Source of the DNA: Macrostomum lignano
Taxonomy: Eukaryota
Assembly (NCBI GenBank): GCA_002269645.1
Contig: NIVC01000847.1
Coordinates: 62,001 to 126,000, forward strand
Direction: 5' to 3'
DNA: 64,000 nt
In this document: piece by piece, positions 10,443-59,115 of the stretch
How positions within the stretch are numbered: position 1 is the stretch's first letter
Layout of the letters: the number at the start of each line of letters is the position of its first letter
The notes under the pieces: model-generated
What the model was told of the DNA's origin: nothing
What the model saw: the letters and a program-made list of their open reading frames with translations, nothing else
The model's database searches: none
Position numbers and translations under genes: made by a program

Positions 10443-11432
<990 letters not shown>

Positions 11433-11552
11433 TAACATCAAACCCCAGGTTTATTCATTGTCCGGCCATATTAATTTGGCCTTCAATTGAAACATAAGGA
11501 ACTGAGCTTACACGAAATCGCCAACAGCCTCTCATCCACGCCAATCTCTCAG

Positions 11553-12215
11553 TGCCGCCCCTGGGCTACGCCAAGTCCATGAGCACCTGGCCTGCTTTCC
11601 TGGCCCGCATCGAGGCTGCCGGCAACTTCGCCCCGGCCGCCTGTTTCAAGCGGCCACCACCGGCTCCGGCCAGGAACACGTTCGCGCCCGGCCAGCGACT
11701 CGAGGCCGTCGATCGGAAGCATCCGCAGCTGGTCTGTCCGGCCACTGTCCGGGACATCCGGCAGGACCGGTTGCACGTCTCCTTTGACGGCTGGCGCGGC
11801 GCGTTCGATTATTGGTGCCGCTACGATAGTAGGGATATTTTCCCTGTCGGCTGGTGCTCGGCCGCCGGCTATCCGGTGCAGCCGCCCGGCTCCTCCGTCT
11901 CCTATTCGCCAACTACTACTACTAATAATACTACTAGTACAAGTAGTAGTAGTCGATTCCAGTCCAACCGAAACAAAGTCAAACAGGCGTCTGGCGCGTC
12001 CGGCGTCTCCACGGCGTCGCCGTCCGCCTTCTCGGACAGATCCTCGTCCGCTGGCAGTCCGCCGCCGCCGCCGCCGCCGCCTCAGCCGGCGCTGCAGTCC
12101 AATCCCGACAATGACGATGTTTCTATTGTTAATGAGGCGGATCAATCTGTAGCAGTTTCAGCGCACGCACCGGTGTTAGTAACTGAGTCTGAAGAGGATG
12201 CTGCGGAGCCCGATT
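11553..12215 (+). CDS. Scm: Scm-like protein, MBT repeat 2 plus Ser/Thr/Pro-rich linker exon
   Basis: Acceptor TCTCTCAG|TG; PPLGY...WPAFL...GQRLEAVDRKHPQLVCPATV...LHVSFDGWRGAFDYWCRYDSRDIFPVGWC...VQPPG; donor GATT|GTGAGT at 12216, phase 1. Confidence 0.93.
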
Positions 12216-12267
12216 GTGAGTTTTGTATTTATTTTTTCTCTCAAACCACTCGTATTTTGTATTTTTG

Positions 12268-13368
12268 ATCGGTCATTAAGCTTGGCTTCCCTATTGTCAT
12301 TGGGTCCCTCTCATCGGTCATTAAGCTTGGCTTCCCTATTGTCATTGGGTCGGGTCCCTCTAATCGGTCATTAAGCTTGGCTTCCCTATTGTCATTGGGT
12401 CCCTCTCATCGGTCATTAAGCTTGGCTTCCCTATTGTCATTGGGTCCCTCTCATCGGTCATTAAGCTTGGCTTCCCTATTGTCATTGGGTCCCTCTCATC
12501 GGTCATTAAGCTTGGCTTCCCTATTGTCATTGGGTCCCTCTCATCGGTCATTAAGCTTGGCTTCCCTATTGTCATTGGGTCCCTCTCATCGGTCATTAAG
12601 CTTGGCTTCTCTATTGTCATTGGGTCCATGCTTGGGCGCAACCTTGGGATTCACCCGGCCGTTTCTATTGGCAACACACGCATGTAAGTCGCTATTGGCT
12701 GAGAGCAGTCACGTGACTACTGTTCTGTCCAATAGCGACTTACATGCGTGTGTTGCCAATAGAAACGGCCGAGTGAATCCCAAAGTTGCGCATGTATGAT
12801 TGGGTCCCTCTAATCGGTCATTAAGCTTGGCTTCCCTATTGTCATTGGGTCCCTCTCATCGGTCATTAAGCTTGGCTTCCCTATTGTCATTGGGTCCCTC
12901 TAATCGGTCATTAAGCTTGGCTTCCCTATGGTCATTGGGTCCCTCTCATCGGTCATTAAGCTTGGCTTCCCTATTGTCATTGGGTCCCTCTCATCGGTCA
13001 TTAAGCTTGGCTTCTCTATTGTCATTGGGTCCCTCTCATCGGTCATTAAGCTTGGCTTCCCTATTGTCATTGGGTCCCTCTCATCGGTCATTAAGCTTGG
13101 CTTCCCTATTGTCATTGGGTCCCTCTCATCGGTCATTAAGCTTGGCTTCCCTATTGTCATTGGGTCCCTCTCATCGGTCATTAAGCTTGGCTTCCCTATT
13201 GTCATTGGGTCCCTCTAATCGGTCATTAAGCTTGGCTTCCCTATTGTCATTGGGTCCCTCTCATCGGTCATTAAGCTTGGCTTCCCTATTGTCATTGGGT
13301 CCCTCTCATCGGTCATTAAGCTTGGCTTCCCTATTGTCATTGGGTCCCTCTAATCGGTCATTAAGCTC
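12268..13368. repeat. 45-bp minisatellite (TCGGTCATTAAGCTTGGCTTCCCTATTGTCATTGGGTCCCTCTCA), Scm intron 3
   Basis: Highly homogeneous units, interrupted once by the 172-bp MITE. Confidence 0.95.
12627..12798. mobile_element. 172-bp palindromic MITE (hAT-like) inserted in a 45-bp minisatellite
   Basis: About 63-bp inverted arms (12636 onward vs ending 12791) with 2 mismatches; centre AGTCACGTGACT; termini CAT...ATG; 8-bp TSD ATTGGGTC at 12619-12626 and 12799-12806. Confidence 0.85.
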
Positions 13369-13415
13369 AGCTTCCAAGCCACATCATTCCCAAACCTCCC
13401 GGTTGCTTTCCGCAG

Positions 13416-13666
13416 CCGACATGTCCGGCTGGTCCAATGCTGAGGTCAGTCGCGGCCTCCGCTATTGGCGCCTGTCAGAGCTGGCGCCGCTGCTTCAGCG
13501 CCACTCTGTCGACGGCCTGGCGCTTCAATCGCTGACCGCGGACACCCTGGTGCTGGGCATGGGCGCCAGGGTCGGCCCAGCGCTCAAACTGGTCAGCCGA
13601 GTTGAGAGAGCTCGCCGACGCCAGAATCTGTTGCGCTGTCTGCGAGCTCTGCACAGAAATTCCTGA
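13416..13666 (+). CDS. Scm: Scm-like protein, SAM (SPM) domain, last exon
   Basis: Acceptor CTTTCCGCAG|CC in phase 1; DMSGWSNAEV...LLQRHSVDGLALQSLTADTLVLGMGARVGPALKL is a Scm/Ph-type SAM; stop at 13664-13666. Four exons total 1287 nt = 428 aa. Confidence 0.88.
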
Positions 13667-34378: not shown

Positions 34379-35067
34379 AGTGCAGTTGGAACATCTCTCA
34401 AAAATCTAACAGCACAGCATCATTTGATTTTGTAAACAGTGACTGCTCAAGAGAGAGAGAGAGCGTGAGAAACCGGAGACACACTCGAACCTGCCCACTC
34501 GCTGTTCAACTGCCACACCGGCGGGCTCCTACTCTTTGTGTTGTCCTACCTACCTACCCACCTACCCAGCTACTTCTCCAACAAAAGATAGCGTGACCGC
34601 GGCTAAGAGACATCAGAGCCGGCGCAGATTAACAAGTTTAGAGTTAAAAGGGAGCTGGTTGTGTGCGCCGGCATAGCATCAGGGCAATATGATCTGGTTT
34701 GTTGAATCGCCTTCCCCCCTCGAGGTATTTCACACCCTGCCGCGTATCGAATCTGGATAATCGAGCAAAGCAAAGGGGAGGAAATGCACATCGATACAAA
34801 AAACTATCTTTTTGAGATTGGGACCAGCTCGAAAATCCCTAGGATGTCGTGACGGGACTGCTCCGATCGGAAGCCGCTAGTCTGAGTGCATTGTATCGGT
34901 TCTGTAGGGCTCTTCATCTCTTTCTCTTTGTATTAAATTTATTGGGGATTGAGTTTACAAAGAGATTCGAGTTTCCCTGCCCACCTCCGCATGCCATCGT
35001 TGATAGAAAATCCAATTAATTTGTTATTTTGTTAGTTTTGACACTTTTAACAGTTGGGCTTGTCGCT

Positions 35068-36060
35068 GTGGATATTGTTGTGAATGTTGTGGATATTGTT
35101 GTGGATACTCTTGTGGATATTGTTGTGAATGTTGTGGATATTGTTGTGGATATTGTTGTGGATACTCTTGTGGATATTGTTGTGAAGTTGTGGATATTGT
35201 TGTGGATATTGTTGTGGATATTGTTGTGGATACTCTTGTGGATATTGTTGTGAAGTTGTGGATATTGTTGTGGATATTGTTGTGGATATTGTTGTGGATA
35301 TTGTTGCGGATATTTTTGTGGATATTGTTGTGAATGTCGTGGATATTGTTGTGGATACTCTTGTGGATATTGTTGTGGATATTGTTGTGAATGTTGTGGA
35401 TATTGTTGTGAATGTTGTGGATATTGTTGTGAATGTTGTGGATATTGTTGAGAATGTTGTTGTGGATATTGTTGCGGATATCTTTGTGGATATTGTTGTG
35501 GATATTGTTTTGGATATTGTTGTGGATATTGTTGTGAATGTTGTGGATATTGTTGTGAATGTTGTGGATATTGTTGTGGATACTCTTGTGGATATTGTTG
35601 TGAATGTTGTGGATTTTGTTGTGAATGTTGTTGTGGATAATGTTGTGAATACTCTTGTGGATATTGTTGTGGATATTGTTGCGGATATTTTTGTGGATAT
35701 TGTTGTGAATGTTGTGAATATTGTTGTGGATACTCTTGTGGATATTGTTGTGAATGTTGTTGTGGATATTGTTATGAATGTTGTGGATATTGTTGCGGAT
35801 ACTGTTGTGGATATTGTTGTGGATATTGTGGATATTGTTGCGGATATTTTTGTGGATATTGTTCTGAATGTTGTGGATATTGTTGCGGATATTTTTGTGG
35901 ATATTGTTGTGAATGTCGTGGATATTGTTGTGGATACTCTTGTGGATATTGTTGTGGATATTGTTGTGGATATTGTTGTGGATATTGTTGTGGATATTGT
36001 TGTTGATATTCTTGTGGGTACCCTTATGGATATCCTTGTGGATATTGTTGTGGATATTGT
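35068..36060. repeat. 12-bp minisatellite (GTGGATATTGTT)
   Basis: Tandem units with 9-bp variants. Confidence 0.95.
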
Positions 36061-36797
36061 TACACATATTTTTGTGGCAACTTTGTGTTGATTCTTTTGT
36101 GACACAATTTATTTTGACTGTCAATTATTTCAGTGATGAGTGAATTAGCAAATGACTATTTTGAGTCACTTATTATCTCGTACCCCGTGTTGCCTTCAAC
36201 GCAGGAGGATCGGAGAAGTAATTACGCTTACAGACTGCTTTGCCGGTCCAATTAAAAGGCATCGGTTGCAAGATATTAAACTTGATTTCCTCAAAGCTGA
36301 CAGGAAAAGCATACACGGGAGACCATGATTGCTTTCGTGTGTGTGTGTTTTTTCCCGAAAACTCCAAGTCATATTTCAGCTCCTTGCTCGGTGGAAAAGC
36401 AAAAGCAGAGAAATTAGAGAGGCCTTCGTGTCATTAGCAGATTGTTGCTAGCCAGGGTAATCAGCCGGGGCTGTTAGCAACCATTTAAGCCTTCATCCGG
36501 GGGAGGAGGAAGCTTCCCCAAAATCCCCAGCTGCACTGACACCGCACTCCGTCCTTCCCTACCCCTCCGGCCGCAGCCCATGTTGAGGGTCTGATGATTT
36601 TTATTTTCATCCTTAATCTAGCCAATGATTTCTTCTGCAAAAGAGACTTTAGCGGCTGATTTGCTGGGCCCTGCTGCTTCCTGTTCGGTTTCTCAATCTC
36701 AGAAAATCTCAAAGGTGACCCGTCGGCCTCTCTGCAACCGGCAGGGTTATTTTCATTTTCTAAGTAATTTCTTCAATTACACAAATTATTCCTTTTT

Positions 36798-43557: not shown

Positions 43558-44240
43558 AGCGCTACTCTGTGTCTGCAGTGCTACTCTGTGTCTGCAGTGC
43601 TACTCTGTGTCTGCAGTGCTACTCTGTGTCTGCAGTGCTACTCTGTGTCTGCAGTGCTACTCTGTGTCTGCAGTGCTACTCTGTGTCTGCAGTGCTACTC
43701 TGTGTCTGCAGTGCTACTCTGTGTCTGCAGTGCTACTCTGTGTCTGCAGTGCTACTCTGTGTCTGCAGTGCTACTCTGTGTCTGCAGTGCTACTCTGTGT
43801 CTGCAGTGCTACTCTGTGTCTGCAGTGCTACTCTGTGTCTGCAGTGCTACTCTGTGTCTGCAGTGCTACTCTGTGTCTGCAGTGCTACTCTGTGTCTGCA
43901 GTGCTACTCTGTGTCTGCAGTGCTACTCTGTGTCTGCAGTGCTACTCTGTGTCTGCAGTGCTACTCTGTGTCCATGCAGTGCTACTCTGTGTCTGCAGTG
44001 CTACTCTGTGTCCATGCAGTGCTACTCTGTGTCTGCAGTGCTACTCTGTGTCTGCAGTGCTACTGTGTGTCTGCAGTGCTACTCTGTGTCCATGCAGTGC
44101 TACTCTGTGTCTGCAGTGCTACTCTGTGTCTGCAGTGCTACTCTGTGTCTGCAGTGCTACTCTGTGTCTATGCAGTGCTACTCTGTGTCTGCAGTGCTAC
44201 TCTGTGTCTGCAGTGCTACTCTGTGTCTGCAGTGCTACTG
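43558..44240. repeat. 19-bp minisatellite (CTACTCTGTGTCTGCAGTG)
   Basis: Near-perfect tandem units. Confidence 0.96.
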
Positions 44241-46873
44241 TGTTCTGTCTGTCTAAAAATCTGCAACTCAGCTTTCAAATTCAGCAAATTATAACTTGCC
44301 CAGCCAGAAGGCCTATTTTGGCACAAAAAGCATGAACTAGGGAGGGGGGGCAGCCACTAACTGAGAGGCCGGTCAAACAAATAATTGGTCACTTCGAGGG
44401 CGTGGGGAAGGGCGAGATTCGATGTGCACCTGAGCTCCAGCACTAGGGAATAATAAAATATTGCAGCCCCCGCATCTCGCACAATGTCTAATCCGACAAG
44501 CCTTTTTAAAAACTACAATCGCAGCTGGGAATTAAGTCTCTATTAGGCAGATGATGATGATGAGTTGAAAGCTTTAACAGGCAAAAAAGCCAGCGCCGAT
44601 ATGGCCTCGCGTTAAATAACAGTTCTGCGCAGTGATGCCCCCCCCCCTCATAGGACTCAGCTGGATGATATTCGACTAAAAGCACTCAGCTCTCTGAGAT
44701 CAGCCTATTACGAGTAGGCCAGGGGAGCGAAGGGGATAGATGGGTAAGACAGACATTTAATCTTGAATTGTTGCTACTTCAGCAAATTACAGATCAAAGA
44801 GTTTTAAGTAGAGGCTAAACCAGCAGCCAGCCAGGTGTCCGCGTGTCTTCCTCCCCCCCCCACCCCTTGCTTTCTCAGTCTCCGGTTGAGCTTCATCGCA
44901 TCTGCTCCTCCTGCCTCTCCCCAAACTGAGTCAGCTTCGCGGCACGTTGCTGAGTTGTCGGCAGCCCCCCCCCCACTTCCCCTATCCTCCTCAATTCACT
45001 TTGCTCTCTAAGGGATCCACTGTCTTGTACGCCCGCCCCCTTATTGCCTCTCTTTAACATATATATCCCATATCTCATTTCGCCCCTCTTTTTAGCAAAG
45101 TCATCAATCGTTTGAGTGGTTTAGCTTTCAATTATCCCCAACTCCCAATCCCCGACTCATCTTCTCTCGCTGGAGCTTCTCTGCTGTTAATACCTAGGGG
45201 CCTAAAAAGCTGCTTAGCCAGTGGCAGGTGGCAACAAGAAGCAGTGAAAGATCAAGGCTTAAAGCTCGCATGTTGTCTGTATCGCTTCCAATTCTTCTCG
45301 CTCTCCTCAAAGTCTCTGATCGACCTCTCCTCTTAGTTAGAGAAGCTCCCAGTTCTAGTCGGCCATGCAGCTTCTGGACTAGAATTAAAACGTTTTTTAG
45401 TGTGCAACGGTCGTCCCTTTCCTACTTTGTTGGGCTGTTTAACAGATTTAAATTCATTATTCCGTATACTGTACTCTCGCAATTTCAGACCGAAATAATT
45501 TTACCTCATATTTGTACATGTACGTACGTGGTGCATAAATAAGTGACCCACTGCACACTTATAAAATCAGATTGAAGTGTTTCTTTCATTTGCTTCTAAA
45601 GAGTAAGGCTGTTTGATTGATATAGATGTAAATGGTAAATAGAATTTAATTCTTTTTGGAAGCTCTTGCTTGTATAATGTCTATTGACAATGCAAAATCA
45701 ATGTCGTTGCAAACTAAAAAGGCTATATGTACGTGTATCATGATTATTGAGTTATTTAACATTGACAATCAAGCAAGAATAACATTTTTTGCGAAACCAT
45801 TAGACAACATATGTAGCTCCAGAATAAGTTTATTGTTTATTGAAGTGTTCCAGCCAAAAATCTTACGTGCGTACTTTATTTATTTATTTTAAATTAGCAA
45901 TGCTTCAAATTGTTTCCGTAGATTTAAGAAACTTTCGGGTACCGGCTTTCGGTTCAAACGTTTTGTAAGACTTAACAAAATATTTTATCTCACTCTTACA
46001 GTTTTTGGAGAAAAACTAATTCTATACAACAGAAAAATATGTTAATATTGACTAAACGTTAGTGTGTACTTGACAGAACTAAAAAATGAGGCGAAATTGC
46101 ATTATTAACGATAATTTGAATGTATTTATATTTTCGTATAACTTTGTCTTTAAAAATGGCGATCATGCATATTGAGTCACAATTGTAATAAAAATTTTTC
46201 TGTTTAATTTTTAGTTCATTGAAATAGAATTATGAAAGCATACGAAAAGCTGCTTGCTACCTTATACTATAGTGCACTAAGGTCATGCTTTTGCAAATTA
46301 TAGATGCTTAGTCAATAACAATAAGTCAGAAGATCTCATTATTATAAATGGATATATCATATTTATTCATATTTAGATGTTATTGTCAGTGCATGATTTG
46401 AAATCAAGACATTTTTTGTCTGCGCATTTATTTTTTATATCCAGTAACTATAAAAGTAAATAATACTTAATACAAATAGTTGTCGTTGAAGTTTTGACTT
46501 TTATACTTTTATGACGTAGTAAAGTTAGTTGTTTATAAAGATAAAAATTATGCAAGAATTATTTGTAAATCAAATTTTCCTTTATAAATGAATGTAATAA
46601 TCATTTTGATACTATTATTTATATCAATTAGTATAAGTCAAGATTAGAACAACCAATTTTATAGTTAGAAGTTAGTGTGTCAAAAAGAAAAAATACTTTG
46701 TTTTTCTTAAAACTTGTTTTTTTTTCTTTTTCATTCATTCTGCTAAAAATATTTGCTAAAGATTTTTAGAGTTTTAAACAACCTTTGTCGTTTTTTATAT
46801 TTAAAAATTAAAGTGAAATATCATTGCCTAACCAATCAATCTTCCTTTTCTTTCATGCTAAAAAACTTGAACA

Positions 46874-47249
46874 ATGGAGAATGGTATGCCATCTCAGACC
46901 TTCACTAGTGAGGACTACAGGCCACAATATGAAGGCGTGTTCTCAAACAACAAGTCCAGTGATTTTCTGCTTAAAGTACTCTTCATTCTAGCCCTATTTC
47001 TGGTCTTATTATTCTTTACTGCCTGGTATATTACGCGCAAGAATGTGAGGTTTCCAATGGCAACAGTGTGTCGGGTGACACCAACCAGTCTGCTACTTGG
47101 GGAATTCCTGCGCCAGTTCACCGAGCCATTCGTGCTGGTTGAATTTAATAAGCGACGAGACTGGCTGTTTGTTGTCAGCCAAGCTGATGTGGTTTATAGC
47201 TCTGCATTCACCTCCAAGCTGATTTATGCAAGGCCTCACCTGGCCTTTG
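46874..47249 (+). CDS. Cytochrome-P450-fold protein, exon 1 (membrane anchor and beta1 region)
   Basis: ATG at 46874; hydrophobic anchor FLLKVLFILALFLVLLFFTAWYI, basic TRKNVRFP, then EPFVLVEF...LFVVSQADVV...IYARP; donor TTTG|GTGAGT, phase 1. Confidence 0.8.
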
Positions 47250-47319
47250 GTGAGTAATCGGCGAGTATCCAAACCTTTTGTGTAATAAAAATTGCCTGGT
47301 GTTGTTTACGATTGTTAAG

Positions 47320-47655
47320 ACCTGGTGATTATTATGATGGTTATGATGATAATTATGATAATGATGATGATTATTATTATAATTATGATGATTATGATGA
47401 TAATTATGATGATGATGATTCTGATAATGATAATGATTATGATAATACGAGTAATTATGATTATGATGATTTTGAGGATGATTATGATGATGATAATATT
47501 TATTAGCTATGATGATTATGTTAATTATGATGATGATGATTATTATTATTATTATGATTATGAAGATAATTATGATGATAATTGTGATTATGATTATGAT
47601 TATTATGATGATGATTATGCTGATGATAAGCTATCAGGACAGTGATGATGATAAT
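47320..47655. repeat. (GAT/TAT/AAT)n trinucleotide low-complexity tract, CYP-like intron 1
   Basis: GATGATTATTAT-type runs. Confidence 0.92.
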
Positions 47656-47683
47656 TATCTATCTCCCGTCCCCCTCCCCCCAG

Positions 47684-48117
47684 ACGACTGGAAGGCCACA
47701 ACGGTGTACTCTTTGAACTACGAAGAGCTCCGCGTTGTCGGCCTGCTTTCGCGATTCGCAGTGGACGATCTGCTGCACTCGCACGCTCTGCTTGGCAACT
47801 GCGTTGACGAAGCGCTCGCCTGCCTTGGCGACCGGCTACGCGGCGACGGCGACGGCGGCGGCAACAATGCAGACAGCAAAGTCTCGGCCGATAACGCCAG
47901 CGCGTTTATTGACGAGTCGGTTGTGTCCGGCATCGTCCGAGCCTACCTGCTGGACGCCGTGTTCGGCGGCTCCGACCTGTGCGATGACCTGCAGCCGCAG
48001 TTGGACAGCATCTTGGACAAGTACATGGCCTTCTTCCGCTCCGCTCACCTGCTCAATCCCAATTGCGACGGGAACAGAATGCACCGACTGCAGGAGGATC
48101 TGCACGGCGAGATCCGG
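47684..48117 (+). CDS. Cytochrome-P450-fold protein, exon 2 (helices C-G)
   Basis: Acceptor CCCCCCAG|AC in phase 1; DDWKATT, LGNCVDEALACLGDRLRG (D-helix-like), FIDESVVSGIVRAYLLDAVFG (E-helix-like); donor CGG|GTGAGA, phase 0. Confidence 0.8.
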
Positions 48118-48224
48118 GTGAGAGTTCCGTCAGATTTCGCATTGGGCTATTTTGAGTACTGCGTCACTTTTTTCTATTGCTTCTTCTTCTCTGTCTTCCC
48201 TCTTCCCTTCTTTCACCCTTTCTC

Positions 48225-49140
48225 TTTTTTCTCCCTTCATTTCCATGTCCCTTCATTTCTCCATCCCTTCATTCCTATCTCCCTTCATTCCTTTCTCCCT
48301 TCATTCCTCTCTCCCTTCATTTCCATGTCCCTTCATTCCTCCATCCCTTCATTCCTATCTCCCTTCATTCCTTTCTCCCTTCATTCCTCTCTCCCTTCAT
48401 TCCTCTCTCCCTTCATTACTCTCTCCCTTCATTCTTCTCTCCCTTCATTCTTCTCTCCCTTCATTCCTCCATCCCTTCATTCCTCTCTCCCTTCATTCCT
48501 TTCTCCCTTCATTCCTCTCTCCCTTCATTCCTCTCTCCCTTCATTATTCTCTCCCTTCATTCTTCTCTCCCTTCATTCCTCTCTCCCTTCATTACTCTCT
48601 CCCTTCATTCTTATCTCCCTTCATTCTTCTCTCCCTTCATCTCTCCCCTCATTCTTATCTCCCTTCATTCTTCTCTCCCTTCATTCATCCATCCCTTCAT
48701 TCCTCTTTCCCTTCATTACTCTCTCCCTTCATTCCTCTCTCCCTTCATCTTTCCCTTCATTCTTATCTCCCTTCATTCCTCTCTCCCTTCATTCTTCATT
48801 CCTCTCTCCCTTCATTCCTCTCTCCCTTCATTCTTATCTCCCTTCATTCCTCTTTCCCTTCATTCCTCTCTCCCTTCATTCCTCTCTCCCTTCATTACTC
48901 TCTCCCTTCATTCTTATCTCCCTTCATTTCTCTCTCCCTTCATCTCTCCCTTCATTCTTATCTCCCTTCATTCCTCTCTCTCTTCATTCCTCTCTCCCTT
49001 CATTCCTCTCTCCCTTCATTCCTCTCTCCCTTCATTCTTATCTCCCTTCATTCCTCTCTCCCTTCATTCCTCTCTCCTTTCATCTCTCCCTTCATTCCTC
49101 TCTCCCTTCATTCCTCCCTTCAATTCTCTCCCTTCATCCC
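48225..49140. repeat. 16-bp pyrimidine-rich minisatellite (CCCTTCATTCCTCTCT), CYP-like intron 2
   Basis: Tandem units. Confidence 0.95.
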
Positions 49141-49314
49141 TCCCTTTATCCCTACCTTTATCTATCCCTTTATCCCTCTATCCTTTCAGGCCATCATTCC
49201 TCTCTCCCTTCATATTCTCCCTTCATACTTCTCTCCCTTCTATTTTCCCTTGTATTTGAATTCACAAGCTCTCTATATATCTATACGACACCCCCTGCAA
49301 CCAATCGAACTCAG

Positions 49315-49614
49315 GACTTTCTGGACCACTTCATGAGCGACACGCACAATAACCTGGTAGATCGCAGCGTGCCCAGCTTCGTTGAACGCTTCATCAAAGA
49401 GAAAATGTCGTTCGATCAGTGCGGCATCACCGACACAGATTTTGTCACGGCCAATCACATGGTTCAGGAGGCGCTGGACTTTGCCTGCTTGTCTCTGGCC
49501 ATTGTGCCCGATCTGGTGCACGCCTGCCTTGTTCGGGTGGCCGCTGCACCCGACCAGTTCTTTGCCGCGGTCAGCGTGGCCGACAACGACAGCGTTGAGG
49601 CTGCACTGGAAGAG
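49315..49614 (+). CDS. Cytochrome-P450-fold protein, exon 3 (helices G-K)
   Basis: Acceptor ACTCAG|GAC, phase 0; DRSVPSFVERFIKEK (H-helix-like), FVTANHMVQEALDFACLSLAIVPDL (I-helix-like), SVEAALEE; donor GAG|GTCTGA, phase 0; 300 nt. Confidence 0.8.
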
Positions 49615-49639
49615 GTCTGAGAGGAGTGGGGGAATGAAT

Positions 49640-50410
49640 AAACGAAGCCTCTGAGGGATAGGGAATGAAGCTCTGAGGGATAGGGAATCAAGCCTCTGAG
49701 GGATAGGGAATCAAGCCTCTGAGGGATAGGGAATGAAGCCTGAGCTGAGGGATAGGGAATGAAGCCTGAGGGATAGAGAATCAAGCCTCTGAGGGATAGG
49801 GAATCAAGCTCTGAGGGATAGGGAATCAAGCTCTGAGGGATAGGGAATGAAGCCTCTGAGGGATAGGGAATGAAGCCTGAGGGATAGGGAATGAAGCCTG
49901 AGGGATAGGGAATGAAGCCTGAGAGATAGGGAAAAGGGAATGAAGCCTGAGGGATAGGGAATCAAGCCTCTGAGGGATAGGGAATGAAGCCTGAGGGATA
50001 GGGAATCAAGCTCTGAGGGATAGGGAATCAAGCCTCTGAGGGATAGGGAATCAAGCCTGAGGGATAGGGAATGAAGCCTCTGAGGGATAGGGAATGAAGC
50101 CTCTGAGGGATAGGGAATGAAGCCTCTGAGGGATAGGGAATGAAGCCTGAGGGATAGGGAATGAAGCCTGAGGGATAGGGAATGAAGCCTCTGAGGGATA
50201 GGGAATGAAGCCTCTGAGGGATAGGGAATGAAGCCTGAGGGATAGGGAATGAAGCCTCTGAGGGATAGGGAATGAAGCCTCTGAGGGATAGGGAATGAAG
50301 TCTGAGGGATAGGGAATGAAGCCTCTGAGGGATAGGGAATGAAGCCTCTGAGGGATAGGGAATGAAGCCTCTGAGGGATAGGGAATCAAGCCTCTGAGGG
50401 ATAGGGAATG
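49640..50410. repeat. 21-23-bp purine-rich minisatellite (GAGGGATAGGGAATGAAGCCTCT), CYP-like intron 3
   Basis: Tandem units. Confidence 0.95.
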
Positions 50411-50504
50411 CAGAATCCTAAGGCATGGTTGGAGCAGACAAAGGATATGAGAGAGAACTGACACTAATCTAATCCCTAAAAAGCAACCGCGGCAAACTCT
50501 GCAG

Positions 50505-50873
50505 ATAATCCGCATAGAAGATATTGGCAGCGATACGGCGGTATTTCTGAGCACAGCTGAGCTGGTGTGCGCCGGCTGCCTGCTGCCCATGGGCTCCTGC
50601 GTGGCGGTGAATCTGCACGCTGTTAACCGCGACCCGCTGGTCTTCCAGTCGGCTGGCGAACTGCACTGGGACAGGTTCGCTCAACAGCCGGAGGGCGGCG
50701 GCATCTCCGGCTCGCCGTTGCAGGCCGTCCATGCTAAATCGCCGTTCTATCGATTCGCTCTGGCCCTGGCATCGGCGCTTGTGCAAGGCGTGCTGCTCAG
50801 GTACCGGCTGAGTCCGGGCAAGCAGCCTGATAGCTTTGCCTATACGGCTAGGCGGGAGGTGCCTGAGGAGTGA
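50505..50873 (+). CDS. Cytochrome-P450-fold protein, exon 4 (ExxR, meander, degenerate heme loop)
   Basis: Acceptor CTCTGCAG|ATA joins EE|IIR (ExxR); GCLLPMGSCVAVNLHAVNRDPLVFQSAGELHWDRF matches the P450 beta-sheet/meander pattern; no Cys after WDRF; four exons total 1479 nt = 492 aa. Confidence 0.82.
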   Translation: MIRIEDIGSDTAVFLSTAELVCAGCLLPMGSCVAVNLHAVNRDPLVFQSAGELHWDRFAQQPEGGGISGSPLQAVHAKSPFYRFALALASALVQGVLLRYRLSPGKQPDSFAYTARREVPEE

Positions 50874-50949
50874 GCAACTGTAGTGCTGCAGTTTGTGTGT
50901 GCGATATCTATGAACTTCAATTTTCAAGGTCTGTTCAATTAACACACAG

Positions 50950-51478
50950 TCAGTAGATAAGCACAATTTTGTGTCAGTAGATAAGCACAGTTTTGTGTCA
51001 GTAGATAAGCACCGTTTTGTGTCAGTAGATAAGCACAGTTTTGTGTCAGTAGATAAGCACAGTTTTGTGTCAGTAGATAAGCACAGTTTTGTGTCAGTAG
51101 ATAAGCACCGTTTTGTGTCAGTAGATAAGCACAGTTTTGTGTCAGTAGATAAGCACAGTTTTGTGTCAGTAGATAAGCACCGTTTTGTGTCAGTAGATAA
51201 GCACAGTTTTGTATCAGTAGATAAGCACAGTTTTGTGTCAGTAGATAAGCACAGTTTTGTGTCAGTAGATAAGCACAATTATGTGTCAGTAGATAAGCAC
51301 AATTCTGTGTCAGTAGATAAGCACAATTCTGTGTCAGTAGATAAGCACAATTCTGTGTCAGTCAGTAGATAAGCACAATTCTGTGTCATTAGATATGCAC
51401 ATTTATGTGTCAGTAGATAAGCACAATTCTGTGTCAGTAGATAAGCACAATTCTGTGTCAGTAGATAAGCACAGTTTT
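50950..51478. repeat. 24-bp minisatellite (GTGTCAGTAGATAAGCACAGTTTT)
   Basis: Tandem units just downstream of the CYP-like stop. Confidence 0.95.
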
Positions 51479-53930
51479 CTGTCAGTAGGTTACTTGTCAC
51501 TGTTCAACTAAAATTTATCATAATTTAAGCTTGGTTGAAAGCAATTTCAATAGGCTTGGTTAATTTATTGGTGTTATTTTAGTATTATTAGCAAACCGCT
51601 GTCACATGTCCAAAATCTACATGTAGAGCATGCATGTACAATGAAGTCTATTCACCACTTTGATGTTGATGTATGGTATTATTCAGTACTTAAACTATTG
51701 TAGCTCGTAATACATGTACTGATCGAAAATCCCTGTTTTTCAGGTTTACTATTAGTATTACGATTAACTTTATGGTTTAAATTATTAGTTGCATATTAAT
51801 ACGTATTCAGTAAGCCTAATGTTTTAAATATTATTATTCAAATAATTTAGTGGTTCCTTTTTGAATGAATGATTTTTTACCTCCTGAGCTTCGAAGTTCC
51901 AAAAATAGTTTTGAACGAGGCTGCAGTAAAGTGATATATGAGTTCTAGTCTCCCCTTTCCTTCAGATCTTATGAGATTTTTGCCTTGACATTTATTACTG
52001 AGATTGATCAAGCTGAAATTGGAGCCTTGAAGTATACATATATAAATATTGTCTATGTTATTTATACACATAACTAGTCATTAAATCGCAATACGCTCGT
52101 ATTTCAATTTTTCCTCCTGCAAAGTTTTACTCTTACTTTGTTTATGCGTGTTTTTTAACTGCATCCTGCATCCATAAGTTAGCATTAGCATTAGAAGATA
52201 GTCTCAGTCATCGTCTGCGTGTCACTTTTGTTGCTTCATTTTTAATTAGTTCTTTTTTCCTGAGCTCATTAATCAATTTTATACATTAAATTACGAACAA
52301 TTAAATGTGATGTATCAATCACAGTAAAGTTTTCTGAAATCACATCCGGTATATTGCTAAATAAGTTTACGCTAAGGCAGTGTGTAAATAATTTATCTTA
52401 GCGGCTAACTTGAACAAAAGTGTGCATATATGGAGCTTCATGTATTTACATTTCGTGTTTAAGCATCTTAATCTCGACGATCCAGGAGTCCAAAATGTAC
52501 ATGCATACATGTACGTTCCTCGTCTTACAGGTAAGCTGCATGGGTAATCCGTATACATGTACATGTACACATGTATATCTGCGCTACAGCAAAAAGGCAT
52601 TCTTAAAAATTAATACACACTCATCAGTAGTCTAGGTTCTATATGGGCAGTCTAAATTTTTAGTTCATACAGGGAAAAGTGCATATTTTATATGCTATAA
52701 ACCCCTGTTATACTACAGTCGTCCTTAGTGTAAGTACATCAAATGTACGAAATTCCTACACGAATTTCACAGAGCTTTGTTAATGAATTGCTTGTTGCTT
52801 CTCTTCGAACCGTAATATACATAAGCTAGGATTCCGTAAAAAAGAAAAAATATATATCCAAAACAGCTGCAGAATTTGGCAATTGCCAATCGCGTTGCTT
52901 ACACTTGTCCGTGTATAGCAATACAATATGGCAAGATCAATCGAGAAGTCATGGTTCTTAAAAAGTCGTTAAAAAAGTAGCCGAAAAAGTATCGAAAACA
53001 TACATTATTAAGTTATGTTGTCTTGTTGCTAATTTACTGTAAAATTAGTAATAATGGTTAGATTACTTATTAACTGACATTTTAATTTGTTTTAACTTTT
53101 AATGAAAATAGTATAAATATACGTGTCTGAGCCCGCTCCTGTTGGGCGCCAAATTAATTTTTTTAGTCTTCAGTGATTCCCTGTCGCTTTGCATAAAAAT
53201 TGTGTACTTTTATGACAACCTTGAAGTAAAACTATATTTGTACTTTCTTTTAATTGTACACACATACAAATGATTTGTTCACAGGCTTTAAAATGCATTG
53301 AGTGTACCAAATGATATAATGTCTGTAAATATGAGGCGTGGAATTAAACCACATGGCGGTAAGTAGTATCACCCGGTTTTGAATGTATTTTCTATAAAAT
53401 TCTCCGAAGACCAAATATCTGTTTGTCTGTAGTAAATGTGTTTTATTTTTTATTCTCAAAATCCTACCCAAAATCTGTATTTTTTTTAAACAAACTTGTT
53501 TATCATGGGTTTAGTGACTCAGCAGCAAAGATTTTCTACACTATTTATATCAATTTATATATCTTTTTAATTTATTATTAAATTAAAAATTGTTTTAGAA
53601 CTTGTTTTAATCCATGATCAATATAACTTTAATTATTTTTATAATGCTTAAGCCTTAGGTTTCAAACCTCTTTGACAAAATAATTTTCAGTAGAAGTAAA
53701 TAATGGCAAAAAATACTTTTGCAATGACCATTCCATGGTCAAGAAGGTATACAATATGTTAATAAAGTAACAATTGTTGCAATATTCAAATTTTTCAATA
53801 TAATATATATCATTTGTCACATTCAAAAAAATGTTTTATGCTATTTGAATTGAATTGAATGTTTGAAAAAAGGGCAAGTACATGTTCACATATCACATTG
53901 TGTGAATTAACAAGATTTTACTTTATAGAC

Positions 53931-57594: not shown

Positions 57595-58589
57595 GTGGCG
57601 GCAGCGGCGGCAGCTTTCACGCACTTGGCAGCAAATCTGGCGCCGCGACAGTTTCACCAGCGCCAGCAGCAGCAGCCGGCGGCGCCCCAGTTGTAGTCGG
57701 GCTGGCGCCATCCGGGGCGCCGCAGCTGGCTGGCCAGCGCCGGCCTGGCGCCAAGGAGGCCAGCTTCGAGTCGAACGCTTGGCCAGTGGATCCAACCGAG
57801 CTGGTTCGCTCAGTCGAACAGCTGGAATCTCGCGGCAGTACAGATGCCCGAGCTCAAGCTGAGATGCACCTGTGCGGAGCGCTTGTACAGTTGCGCTCGT
57901 GCAAGACTCGCCTACCGCCTATACTGACTGTGAGCCTGGCCTACCTGGCCAAGTCCAGGCCCACCAGCTTCACTCGGCCATTCATATTTGACGGTCTTTG
58001 CTCGTTCCTACGCAAGCGGGATCAGGTGTCCCGGCCGGCCGCTATGCTCTGCGTTGGCTTGTTAACTGCCGCTCTGCGCGACCAGGACGCCTGGCCGGAC
58101 TCAATCCTGCGGGCATTTGTTGAAGACTCGGTTGGCGATAGATTCTGGGTAGATCGGACCGACTGCCGCTGGCTGGTGCGCAATCTGGAGGCTTCGTTTC
58201 CCAATGCCACACCGGCTGATGCTTTGTTCACCTTTGGCGGCACACGAGGCAACGCTACTAAAGAGTTGCCGCAGACGCACACTAGCGTAAGCGTTGCCGC
58301 CACCGCCAGCGACGATGACTCGGCCCAGAGCGGCAGCAGCGGCGTTCAAGATGGCCAGCAGCAGCAACAGCCAGCAATTCAACCGCGCTACGCTAAGAAG
58401 CCGCACTGGCTAGAAGAGCTAGTTGTTGTCTGCGTCAAAGACGCTTTGCAGAAACGCGGCCAGGCTACATCTAGCGAAGCTGCTCAACGGGCCGTCATCC
58501 GGCTGATGACTGTGGCGGCTGGCTATTCAGAGATTCGATTGATGGCTGCCAACCGGTTGGAGATGTGGTTGCAGCTGGCTAAGTTACAG
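57595..58589 (+). CDS. INTS1: Integrator complex subunit 1, first identifiable coding exon
   Basis: Acceptor ATAACATCAG|; GGSFHALGSK, LCGALVQL...SLAYLAKSRP, WPDSILRAFVEDSVGDRFWVDRTDC, RLEMWLQ recall INTS1 N-terminal motifs (GDFIALGSK, LCGAVKQL, WPEIFVKVYIEDSLGERIWVD); donor CAG|GCGAGT. Start-codon exon not securely found. Confidence 0.9.
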
Positions 58590-58639
58590 GCGAGTCTGCG
58601 AGATTTCACCTGCTCGCATTTGGGATTTGTTACACCTGT

Positions 58640-59115
58640 GTTTAACCAGTGGGGTATTGGGATCTGTGCGTATAATCTAGGGTGTATTGGAATATGTAGG
58701 GTGTATTGGGATCTGTGCGTCTAATCTAGGGTGTATTGGAATATGTAGGGTGTATTGGGATCTGTGCGTCTAATCTAGGGTGTATTGGGATCTGTACACC
58801 TGCGTCTAATCTGGGGTATTGAGATCTGTACACATGTGTCTAATCTGGGGTGTATTGGGATCTGTGCACCTGTGTCTAATCTGGAGTGTATTGGGATCTG
58901 TACACCTGTGTCTAATCTGGAGTGTATTGGGATCTGTACACCTGTGTCTAATCTGGGGTGTATTGGGATCTGTACACCTGTGTCTAATCTGGGGTGTATT
59001 GGGATCTGTACACCTGTGTCTAATCTAGGGTGTATTGGGATCTGTACACCTGTGTCTAATCTGGGGTGTGTTGGGATCTGTACACCTGTGTCTAATCTAA
59101 GGTGTATTGGGATCT
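58640..59115. repeat. 36-bp minisatellite (CTGTGTCTAATCTGGGGTGTATTGGGATCTGTACAC), INTS1 GC-AG intron
   Basis: Tandem units; same unit as 61580-62900. Confidence 0.95.

What the first reader, a model, noticed from the sequence alone, without database searches (positions are those of the whole stretch)
46874..50873. Intact cytochrome-P450-fold gene that has lost its heme and catalytic residues (candidate P450 pseudoenzyme, Ser at the axial Cys position)
Seen: four exons with canonical, phase-compatible splice sites give an uninterrupted 492-aa ORF, the usual microsomal P450 length, with an N-terminal TM anchor. Established: P450s need the FxxGxRxC heme loop, the C-helix WxxxR, the I-helix AGx(E/D)T acid-alcohol pair, and the structural ExxR/PERF triad. 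By-eye alignment: ExxR is kept (EE|IIR, formed across the exon 3-4 junction) and PERF is kept as WDRF. The heme loop PFSAGKRIC aligns gap-free to PLQAVHAKS (50715-50741; Cys replaced by Ser, TCG), and no Cys occurs anywhere after WDRF. WxxxR becomes WKATT and FFAGTETT becomes FVTANHMV. Inference: the fold is preserved while heme chemistry is lost, as expected for a non-catalytic ER-anchored lipid/sterol binder, sensor or scaffold rather than a decaying pseudogene. Cys-to-Ser axial ligation is known from engineered P411 enzymes, but loss of both propionate-binding Arg residues makes a heme-free protein more likely.
Basis: partly seen in the sequence, partly recalled or inferred. Interest (0 to 1): 0.85.

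Follow-up and report, generated by a model that had tools for sequence, protein, structure and literature searches.

The report
Cysteine-less P450-like gene in flatworm
This is an intact, transcript-annotated gene of the flatworm Macrostomum lignano for a membrane-anchored relative of cytochrome P450 that has lost the iron-binding cysteine and every other conserved heme contact I could map, so it is probably a heme-free "pseudoenzyme", a kind so far described only in bacteria.

Summary
Four GT..AG exons (46874-47249, 47684-48117, 49315-49614, 50505-50873, + strand) give a 492-aa ORF identical to GenBank PAA76028.1, a "hypothetical protein" of Macrostomum lignano whose annotation was built from RNA-seq. 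It is a very divergent P450 homologue: Pfam p450 23.7 bits against a cut-off of 22.8, and hhalign 97.7% over residues 76-433.

Its only close relative in 1.84 billion representatives is P0005, from an unidentified eukaryote. P0005 keeps a normal heme loop (PFSIGSRKC). The flatworm protein has PLQAVHAKS there, with Ser449 (TCG, 50739-50741) at the Cys position.

Six heme-contact positions that P0005 keeps are replaced: C-helix Arg to G145, beta1-4 Arg to F384, loop Phe/Gly/Arg/Cys to L442/V445/A447/S449. ExxR and WDRF are kept.

No alternative Cys-loop exon exists nearby. Three near-identical genomic copies differ at 6 synonymous and 2 nonsynonymous sites. Neutral decay long enough to erase all these residues would almost certainly have broken the ORF.

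Best reading: a heme-free, membrane-anchored P450-fold pseudoenzyme (confidence about 0.55). Its function is unknown, AlphaFold failed, and no orthologues were available.

The parts
46874..47249 (+). Exon 1 (aa 1-125 plus the first base of codon 126): N-terminal tail, TM anchor, beta1 region
   Evidence: ATG at 46874 and GT donor at 47250. Identical to PAA76028.1.
46925..47041 (+). Pre-TM motif plus TM helix, aa 18-56 (QYEGVFSNNKSSDFLLKV...; TM about 31-53, 46964-47032). This is the best-conserved stretch shared with P0005.
   Evidence: 41% identity to P0005 against about 25% elsewhere. Hydropathy maximum at residue 31.
47684..48117 (+). Exon 2 (aa 126-270). It holds the C-helix equivalent at 138-150 (47719-47757), where G145 stands at the conserved heme-propionate Arg.
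   Evidence: AG acceptor and GT donor. In alignment A2 the column of G145 is R in P0005, P0006 and P0007. hhalign agrees.
49315..49614 (+). Exon 3 (aa 271-370). It holds the I-helix, and it ends with E370, the Glu of ExxR.
   Evidence: Splice sites. Profile alignments.
49489..49506 (+). I-helix oxygen-activation position: L329-S-L-A-I-V334 in place of (A/G)Gx(E/D)T(T/S)
   Evidence: Aligned to AGHETT and AGYATT of bona fide P450s.
50505..50873 (+). Exon 4 (aa 371-492 plus TGA): rest of the K-helix (R373), beta1-4, meander, degenerate heme loop, L-helix
   Evidence: AG acceptor at 50503-50504 and stop at 50871-50873.
50544..50546 (+). F384 (TTT) at the conserved beta1-4 Arg that binds a heme propionate in P450s
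   Evidence: The A2 column is F in P0001 and P0002 but R in P0005, P0006 and P0007.
50667..50678 (+). WDRF (aa 425-428), the PERF-type meander motif, retained
   Evidence: It aligns to WQRF of P0005 and to LDR of bacterial P450s.
50715..50747 (+). Degenerate Cys-pocket PLQAVHAKSPF (aa 441-451): L442, V445, A447 and S449 in place of Phe, Gly, Arg and Cys. The S449 codon TCG is at 50739-50741.
   Evidence: Gap-free alignment to PFSIGSRKCPA of P0005. The P0005 loop aligns to the CYP51 heme loop. The Pfam match of P0001 stops at profile position 390 of 462, before the loop, while that of P0005 runs through it. The loop amino-acid sequence is identical in all three genomic copies, whose only DNA difference there is the synonymous K448 AAA/AAG.
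47250..47683 (+). Intron 1, mostly a TGATGA/TGATTA microsatellite (47326-47627)
48118..49314 (+). Intron 2, mostly a 16-bp minisatellite (48230-49251)
49615..50504 (+). Intron 3, mostly a 23-bp minisatellite (49644-50410). Read-through of its donor gives Val then a stop (GTC TGA, 49615-49620).

Best explanation
The locus is a real, expressed M. lignano gene. It encodes a very divergent, lineage-restricted member of the P450 fold family, anchored in a membrane by one N-terminal helix. By analogy with microsomal P450s this is probably the ER, with the N-terminus in the lumen and the globular domain in the cytosol. That topology is inferred from the negative N-tail and the TRKNVR stretch after the helix.

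The protein keeps the structural scaffold signature, the E370/R373/R427 "ERR triad". It has lost the thiolate ligand, three conserved Arg residues that neutralise the heme propionates in P450s, the Phe and Gly of the Cys pocket, and the I-helix acid-alcohol pair. It therefore most likely binds no heme and cannot do P450 monooxygenation.

Because the reading frame has been kept long after these losses, it is probably maintained for a non-catalytic job. It would use the P450 scaffold or cavity to bind a hydrophobic ligand or a partner protein, acting as a scaffold, chaperone or regulator. This is what the bacterial heme-free P450 homologues EryCII and DesVIII do for glycosyltransferases.

Shown here: the gene structure, P450 homology, the residue losses, and that annotation of this assembly is transcript-based. 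Inferred: absence of heme, topology, selection, and the binding or scaffold role.
For: - Gene model and identity to PAA76028.1.
- The GenBank annotation of this assembly derives from StringTie/TACO RNA-seq assemblies with an expression filter.
- P450 homology over residues 76-433.
- The nearest relative, P0005 (E 3e-13, full-length, 24% identity), keeps F, G, R and C of the heme loop plus the beta1-4 and C-helix Arg. P0001 has L442, V445, A447, S449, F384 and G145 at those columns.
- The Pfam alignment stops before the heme loop in P0001 but includes it in P0005.
- There is no Cys after C402, and no alternative Cys-loop exon nearby.
- All three genomic copies keep the 492-codon ORF with no indels. 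Their 8 variable CDS sites split 6 synonymous to 2 nonsynonymous. The binomial P is 0.003-0.012 against the neutral expectation, and dN/dS is about 0.1. Both replacements lie in a Gly/Asp-rich loop and in the C-terminal tail.
- GC3 is 0.70 against GC2 0.39.
- Under drift, the chance of replacing 4 or 6 key residues without creating a stop in 492 codons is at most 3e-5 or 2e-6.
- A stable heme-free P450 fold with a scaffold function has a precedent (PMC3391682; PMC11703216).
Against: - There is no orthologue from another Macrostomum species, so there is no real dN/dS and no dating of the Cys loss.
- The three copies are about 99.5% identical. In this redundant neopolyploid assembly they may be alleles, homeologs or haplotigs, so 8 differences is a small sample.
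- Overall CDS divergence between the window and L001 (0.54%) is about the same as in the unique non-coding flanks (about 0.56%).
- AlphaFold2 gave only pLDDT 36-37, so the fold and the state of the heme pocket were not seen.
- The Pfam score is only just above threshold.
- I found no expression level, tissue or phenotype data for this gene.
- Older gene models end at exon 3, so a truncated isoform is possible.
- Heme binding was not measured.
Confidence: 0.55

Rival explanations
1. Dying gene. This would be a transcribed but functionless relic that lost heme binding and is drifting. Its frame is still open by luck, or because the loss is recent.
For: The family is tiny: M. lignano plus one unidentified eukaryote. 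Similarity to P450s is marginal. Free-living flatworms carry dozens of diverged CYPs, so redundancy is plausible. CDS and flank divergence are similar between the window and L001. No expression or phenotype data were found.
Against: Six of six conserved heme contacts are replaced, yet there is no stop or indel in 492 codons in any of three copies. The joint probability under drift is at most 3e-5 to 2e-6. Differences among the copies are biased 6 to 2 towards synonymous. ExxR, WDRF and the N-terminal motif are conserved with a relative only 24% identical. Codon-position GC periodicity is strong.
Confidence: 0.2
2. It is still a heme protein with a non-thiolate ligand. Ser449 alkoxide would ligate the iron, as in the natural bacterial P450-G9 or engineered P411, or the nearby His446 would. 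The chemistry would be altered rather than lost.
For: Ser lies exactly at the axial position. A native Ser-ligated P450 with a typical fold exists (PDB 9CJG; PMC11703216), and it appears among the weak PDB matches. His446 and Lys448 sit in the loop.
Against: All three conserved propionate-binding Arg positions are uncharged (G145, F384, A447). The loop Phe and Gly that shape the Cys pocket are gone. The loop is unrecognisable to the Pfam profile. Established P450 structural knowledge says these residues hold the heme. Loss of all of them together is what one expects when no heme is bound.
Confidence: 0.1
3. It is a neofunctionalised enzyme. The P450 scaffold would have been reused for a heme-independent catalytic activity rather than for a binding or scaffold role.
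For: The same evidence of maintenance as for the main explanation. The relative P0005 already lacks the I-helix acid-alcohol pair (GGQPLA), so the lineage was atypical before the heme was lost.
Against: No candidate catalytic residues or cofactor motifs were identified. I know of no precedent for heme-independent catalysis on a P450 fold, and the searches found none.
Confidence: 0.1
4. It is a gene-model artefact. The true mRNA would use another 3' exon that carries a normal Cys loop, or the Ser would be an assembly error.
For: Older UniRef models of the same gene stop after exon 3.
Against: No F..G.[RHK].C or F..G...C motif occurs in any + strand frame between the gene and about 58 kb. Exon 4 carries the expected K-helix Arg, the AVNRDP strand and WDRF, in register with the intronless P0005 and with no gap at the junction. 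The Ser codon is the same in three independent contigs. The model is transcript-derived.
Confidence: 0.03

Closest known systems
P0005: unnamed 508-aa protein from ENA assembly ERZ25070786, contig ctg124097l (L003:190-1716), the only close relative found
   Same: Full-length homologue (E 3e-13; BLASTP 1e-14, 24% identity over 437 aa). It shares the conserved pre-TM/TM motif, ExxR, W(D/Q)RF and an atypical I-helix without the acid-alcohol pair.
   Different: It keeps a canonical heme loop (PFSIGSRKC) and the propionate-binding Arg residues, so it probably binds heme. It scores 49.9 bits on Pfam p450. Its gene has no introns. It has a 27-residue insertion before the loop. Its organism is unknown: a eukaryote, judged from a neighbouring nucleotide-sugar transporter gene split into separate ORFs and transposon fragments.
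PDGAF family (P450-derived glycosyltransferase activating factors: EryCII, DesVIII; PDB 2YJN)
   Same: P450 fold, axial Cys absent, no heme, non-catalytic scaffold or allosteric activator. The I, J, K and L helices are conserved (PMC3391682; PMC11703216). This is the best functional analogy.
   Different: They are bacterial, soluble and encoded next to a partner glycosyltransferase in antibiotic gene clusters, and they carry an extra N-terminal helix. The flatworm protein has a TM anchor and no such neighbour. 2YJN is not among the 60 listed PDB matches.
Non-canonical CYPs (ncCYPs) of bacteria, especially the natural Ser-ligated P450-G9 (PDB 9CJG)
   Same: A natural P450 homologue with Ser at the aligned axial position (PMC11703216).
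   Different: P450-G9 binds heme through a Ser alkoxide. The 880 ncCYPs reported are all bacterial. Here the other heme contacts are gone as well.
Engineered P411 (P450 BM3 C400S)
   Same: Cys-to-Ser change at the axial position.
   Different: It is a single engineered change in an otherwise intact heme pocket, and it remains a heme enzyme (from my own knowledge and).
Atypical P450s without the I-helix acid-alcohol pair (CYP74 allene oxide synthase, CYP8A1 prostacyclin synthase, CYP5A1); from my own knowledge, not tested here
   Same: They lack the (E/D)T pair, as do both P0001 and P0005.
   Different: They keep the Cys ligand and the heme, and no detectable specific sequence relationship was found.

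Membership tests
Cytochrome P450 superfamily (Pfam PF00067, P450 fold) | Profile match at or above the curated threshold, with homology over the whole domain | tested here: met
   23.7 bits against a cut-off of 22.8. hhalign 97.7%, E 2.4e-12, residues 76-433. 96 PDB matches at E<=0.01, and the 60 listed are all P450s.
Cytochrome P450 superfamily (Pfam PF00067, P450 fold) | K-helix ExxR and meander PERF-type Arg (the ERR triad) | tested here: met
   E370-I-I-R373 and W425-D-R427-F.
Cytochrome P450 superfamily (Pfam PF00067, P450 fold) | Three-dimensional P450 fold | tested here: inconclusive
   AlphaFold2 gave pLDDT 36.9 and 36.1. Foldseek on that model is meaningless.
Cytochrome P450 sensu stricto (heme-thiolate protein) | Axial Cys within FxxGxRxCxG | tested here: not met
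   The sequence is PLQAVHAKSPF, with S449 at the Cys column. F, G and R are also replaced. No Cys follows C402.
Cytochrome P450 sensu stricto (heme-thiolate protein) | Heme-propionate Arg residues in the C-helix and in beta1-4 | tested here: not met
   G145 and F384 stand where P0005, P0006 and P0007 all have Arg. The C-helix register has low confidence.
Cytochrome P450 sensu stricto (heme-thiolate protein) | I-helix (A/G)Gx(E/D)T(T/S) oxygen-activation motif | tested here: not met
   L329-S-L-A-I-V334.
Cytochrome P450 sensu stricto (heme-thiolate protein) | Bound heme with a 450-nm ferrous-CO band | not testable with these tools
   This needs recombinant protein.
PDGAF (EryCII/DesVIII-type heme-free P450 homologues) | P450 homologue lacking the axial Cys | tested here: met
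PDGAF (EryCII/DesVIII-type heme-free P450 homologues) | Specific sequence similarity to EryCII or DesVIII | tested here: inconclusive
   2YJN is not among the 60 listed matches out of 67 and 96. No direct pairwise test was possible.
PDGAF (EryCII/DesVIII-type heme-free P450 homologues) | Encoded beside a partner glycosyltransferase in a bacterial biosynthetic cluster | tested here: not met
   This is an animal locus. The neighbours are prominin-like and INTS1 genes.
Ser-ligated non-canonical CYP (P450-G9 type) | Ser at the axial position | tested here: met
   S449.
Ser-ligated non-canonical CYP (P450-G9 type) | Heme actually bound, with the pocket otherwise intact | tested here: not met
   By sequence, the pocket residues are lost.

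The most novel reading that the evidence does not exclude
This would be the first animal, membrane-anchored counterpart of the bacterial heme-free P450-fold proteins. On this reading it is a P450 pseudoenzyme kept by selection after complete loss of the heme site. Its conserved pre-TM/TM motif (Y.GVFS...S.DF..KV) and its P450 scaffold would serve to bind a lipid or a partner. One speculative example is modulation of other P450s or their reductase at the ER membrane.
Probability: 0.45. Interest if true: 0.6.

Novelty: new variant of a known kind. Interest (0 to 1): 0.45.

Why it matters
P450s are defined by their cysteine-ligated heme. Homologues without it have been characterised only in bacteria: the PDGAF chaperones and the recently reported ncCYPs. 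In animals, such sequences are usually written off as pseudogenes.

A Cys-less P450 homologue that is maintained in an animal would show that the P450 scaffold can be reused for non-redox work in metazoans. M. lignano has RNAi and transgenesis, so the function could be tested directly.

The pair formed by P0001 (heme contacts lost) and P0005 (heme contacts kept) is also a natural before-and-after comparison. It shows which residues change when a P450 gives up its heme.

Tried and rejected
- AlphaFold2 was run twice, on a 2-sequence and a 5-sequence alignment. It gave pLDDT 36.9 and 36.1. Foldseek against the PDB on the second model returned only noise: TTYH channels and designed helical bundles, E>=0.13. 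No structural conclusion is drawn.
- Three word-indexed searches of 5.8 billion proteins (P0001, the A1 profile, P0005) found no orthologues. Apart from the queries' own clusters, the only hit was one weak JGI P450 (P0007, E 0.36).
- The exhaustive search of 1.84 billion representatives found only P0005 and one bacterial-type P450.
- Two scans of JGI metagenome contigs, one with protein patterns and one with a degenerate N-terminal motif, found nothing.
- The organism of P0005 could not be identified.
- Supplements of three M. lignano expression papers hold none of the three gene ids, and no supplement text was held for a fourth. A full-text search for Mlig016456 found nothing.
- Literature searches for eukaryotic Cys-less or heme-free P450 homologues found nothing relevant.
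- Rfam and tRNA scans of the window were empty.
- The idea of an alternative Cys-loop exon or frame was rejected.
- CYP2-clan assignment was rejected because no clan-specific similarity was seen.
- Comparing exon with intron or flank divergence among the three copies was tried, but it is too weak to decide anything.

Full report
**What is there**

The window is Macrostomum lignano scaffold NIVC01000847.1, bases 62001-126000. The exons are 46874-47249, 47684-48117, 49315-49614 and 50505-50873 on the + strand. All have GT donors and AG acceptors, and together they give 1479 nt, or 492 codons plus TGA.

The product is identical to GenBank PAA76028.1, "hypothetical protein BOX15_Mlig016456g1". GenBank annotation of this assembly was not made ab initio. 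It comes from a genome-guided RNA-seq transcriptome (StringTie/TACO plus a de novo assembly, with an expression filter; PMC5730564). So the three junctions have indirect transcript support. I could not see read counts.

The junctions are also supported by homology. The intronless relative P0005 aligns across all three junctions without gaps.

Residues 31-53 form a strong hydrophobic helix. A negatively charged N-tail precedes it and TRKNVR follows it, which suggests the microsomal-P450 type of signal anchor. That topology is an inference.

**Is it a P450?**

Yes, but only just by single-sequence criteria.
- Pfam p450 scores 23.7 bits against a gathering score of 22.8, E 2.4e-5. The match covers residues 219-430 and profile positions 158-390 of 462.
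- phmmer against the PDB returns P450s as its best matches, but only at E around 2e-3.
- A two-sequence profile (P0001 plus P0005) improves this. It gives 96 PDB matches at E<=0.01, and the 60 listed are all P450s, the best at 1.6e-6.
- hhalign of that profile against two ordinary P450s gives probability 97.7%, E 2.4e-12, over 312 columns. These cover residues 76-433, from the beta1 sheet to the meander.

Homology to the P450 fold is therefore established by sequence.

AlphaFold2 gave pLDDT 36.9 and 36.1 with the only alignments I could supply, and Foldseek on that model was noise. No clan can be assigned. The best matches mix bacterial CYP105/107-like enzymes with CYP1A and CYP17, so "CYP2 clan" is unsupported.

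**Relatives**

The family is almost empty. An exhaustive HMMER pass over 1.84 billion representatives found, besides the protein itself, only two hits.
- P0005 is 508 aa, E 3e-13.
- P0006 is a bacterial-type P450, E 5.6e-5.

Word-indexed searches added no orthologues. Two metagenome scans also found nothing.

P0005 comes from ENA assembly ERZ25070786 and is encoded by an uninterrupted ORF (L003:190-1716). Its contig also carries a nucleotide-sugar transporter gene split into separate ORFs and transposon fragments, so it is eukaryotic, but the species is unknown.

P0005 aligns to P0001 end to end (24% identity over 437 residues, BLASTP 1e-14). The best-conserved part is, unusually, the pre-TM/TM segment, at 41% identity with the pattern Y.GVFS...S.DF..KV.

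**The heme site**

P0005 has a textbook Cys pocket, PFSIGSRKCPA. HMMER aligns it to the CYP51 heme loop PFGGGRHRCIG, and Pfam scores P0005 at 49.9 bits through that loop.

MAFFT aligns P0001 PLQAVHAKSPF to it without gaps. The L-helix that follows (RFALALASAL) also fits.

I read the alignment columns against P0005 and two bona fide P450s. Every conserved heme contact I could map is replaced in P0001 and kept in P0005:

| Conserved heme contact | Residue in P0001 |
|---|---|
| C-helix Arg | G145 |
| beta1-4 Arg | F384 |
| Loop Phe | L442 |
| Loop Gly | V445 |
| Loop Arg | A447 |
| Loop Cys | S449 |

That these positions hold the heme comes from established P450 structural knowledge, for example Arg112, Arg299, His355 and Cys357 in P450cam.

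The I-helix AGx(E/D)TT position is L329-S-L-A-I-V334. P0005 also lacks the acid-alcohol pair there (GGQPLA).

ExxR (E370, R373) and WDRF (R427) are retained. There is no Cys after C402.

- FVTANHMV (313-320) lies about 14 residues N-terminal to the true AGxxT position.
- WKATT (128-132) lies upstream of the C-helix (about 138-150).

A minor caveat: one HMMER alignment to CYP105AS1 pairs EGGGISGS (433-440) with FGGGIHxC, which would make S440 the Cys equivalent. The spacing, the L-helix register and P0005 all favour S449, and either way the residue is Ser.

No exon or frame encoding F..G.[RHK].C or F..G...C exists on the + strand between the gene and the INTS1 gene downstream.

**Dead or maintained?**

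The assembly holds three copies: the window, L001 and L002, on three scaffolds. Each keeps the four exons and the 492-codon frame with no indels.

Across the three CDSs there are 8 variable sites, 6 synonymous and 2 nonsynonymous. The replacements are G184D, in a Gly/Asp-rich loop, and D479G, in the C-terminal tail. Against a neutral expectation of 70-76% nonsynonymous, the binomial P is 0.003-0.012. dN/dS is roughly 0.1.

This is suggestive only, for three reasons.
- The sample is eight sites.
- The copies may be alleles or homeologs in a redundant neopolyploid assembly.
- CDS divergence between the window and L001 (0.54%) equals that of the unique non-coding flanks.

A second argument does not depend on the copies. 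Parsimony, given P0005 and P450s in general, says the ancestor had the heme residues. Replacing all four loop residues, or all six contacts, by drift needs so many substitutions that a 492-codon frame would acquire stop codons. The joint probability, maximised over time and ignoring indels, is 3e-5 for four residues and 2e-6 for six.

Together with strong codon-position GC periodicity (GC3 0.70, GC2 0.39), this favours an ORF maintained after heme loss.

**How it probably works**

My best reading, at confidence about 0.55, is a heme-free, membrane-anchored P450-fold pseudoenzyme that binds a ligand or a partner rather than catalysing oxidation.

Removal of all three positive charges that pair with the heme propionates is what one expects for an empty pocket. 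It argues against the main chemical rival, Ser- or His-ligated heme (about 0.1), even though a natural Ser-ligated P450 now exists (P450-G9, PDB 9CJG; PMC11703216).

The remaining rivals are:
- a transcribed relic on its way to decay (about 0.2);
- a heme-independent new enzyme (about 0.1);
- a gene-model artefact (about 0.03).

**Comparison with what is known**

The closest working analogy is the bacterial PDGAF family (EryCII, DesVIII). These are P450 folds without Cys or heme that act as scaffolds and allosteric activators of glycosyltransferases (PMC3391682). Membership fails on gene context and is unproven on sequence.

The 880 non-canonical CYPs surveyed by Nguy et al. are all bacterial. 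My literature searches found no described eukaryotic Cys-less P450 pseudoenzyme. That is absence of evidence in a limited library, not proof of absence.

The protein is already in GenBank and UniProt as an uncharacterised protein with a Pfam p450 tag, so the sequence is not new. The reading of it as a heme-less P450 homologue appears to be.

**Verdict**

I rate it a new variant of a known kind, of moderate interest (0.45). It rests on a single species, a family of two proteins, and no experimental or orthologue data.

Noticed in passing
window 47326-47627, 48230-49251, 49644-50410, 50949-51488, 44000-44247: Every intron of the gene, its 3' flank and a stretch upstream consist largely of different micro- or minisatellite arrays. 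The units are 6-12 bp TGATGA/TGATTA, 16-bp TCTCCCTTCATTCCTC (about 56 copies), 23-bp GAAGCCTCTGAGGGATAGGGAAT (34 copies), 24-bp GTCAGTAGATAAGCACAGTTTTGT (22 copies) and a 19-bp array. The total intron lengths (intron 2 plus intron 3) differ between the three genomic copies.
   Followed up: partly
window 46925-47041 (aa 18-56): The pre-TM/TM segment (Y.GVFS...S.DF..KV plus the helix) is the most conserved part shared by P0001 and its only relative P0005, at 41% identity against about 25% elsewhere. This is unusual for P450 N-termini and hints at a functional membrane or luminal motif.
   Followed up: partly
window 49612-49620: Read-through of the exon-3 donor gives ...EEV then a stop (GTC TGA). 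Two older UniRef models of the gene (A0A1I8I0X7, A0A1I8JAY6) end exactly there and carry unrelated "vacuolar protein sorting" names. An intron-3-retaining isoform would lack the K-helix Arg and everything after it.
   Followed up: no
L003:190-1716: The only relative, P0005, is encoded without introns in an unidentified eukaryote. It has a 27-residue acidic, polar insertion just before an intact heme loop, and it lacks the I-helix acid-alcohol pair (GGQPLA). This suggests the lineage was already an atypical P450, possibly not a monooxygenase, before the flatworm copy lost its heme.
   Followed up: partly
L001, L002 (GCA_002269645.1 NIVC01000846.1 and NIVC01000848.1): Two further copies of the whole locus, about 99% identical including the flanks, exist on other scaffolds. 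Each has an INTS1 gene downstream. This is consistent with the redundancy of the neopolyploid M. lignano assembly. INTS1 is annotated downstream in those copies but not within the 10 kb fetched downstream of the window's copy (L004), although the window has INTS1-like ORFs from about 57.8 kb.
   Followed up: partly
window 10476-13666 (+), 35024-36124 (-), 57786-58724 (+): Other genes are visible as long ORFs with Pfam hits: an MBT repeat plus SAM domain (an L3MBTL/Scm-like gene), a weak prominin-like match, and the Integrator subunit 1 RP2B-binding domain. No tRNA or Rfam RNA was found anywhere in the window.
   Followed up: no
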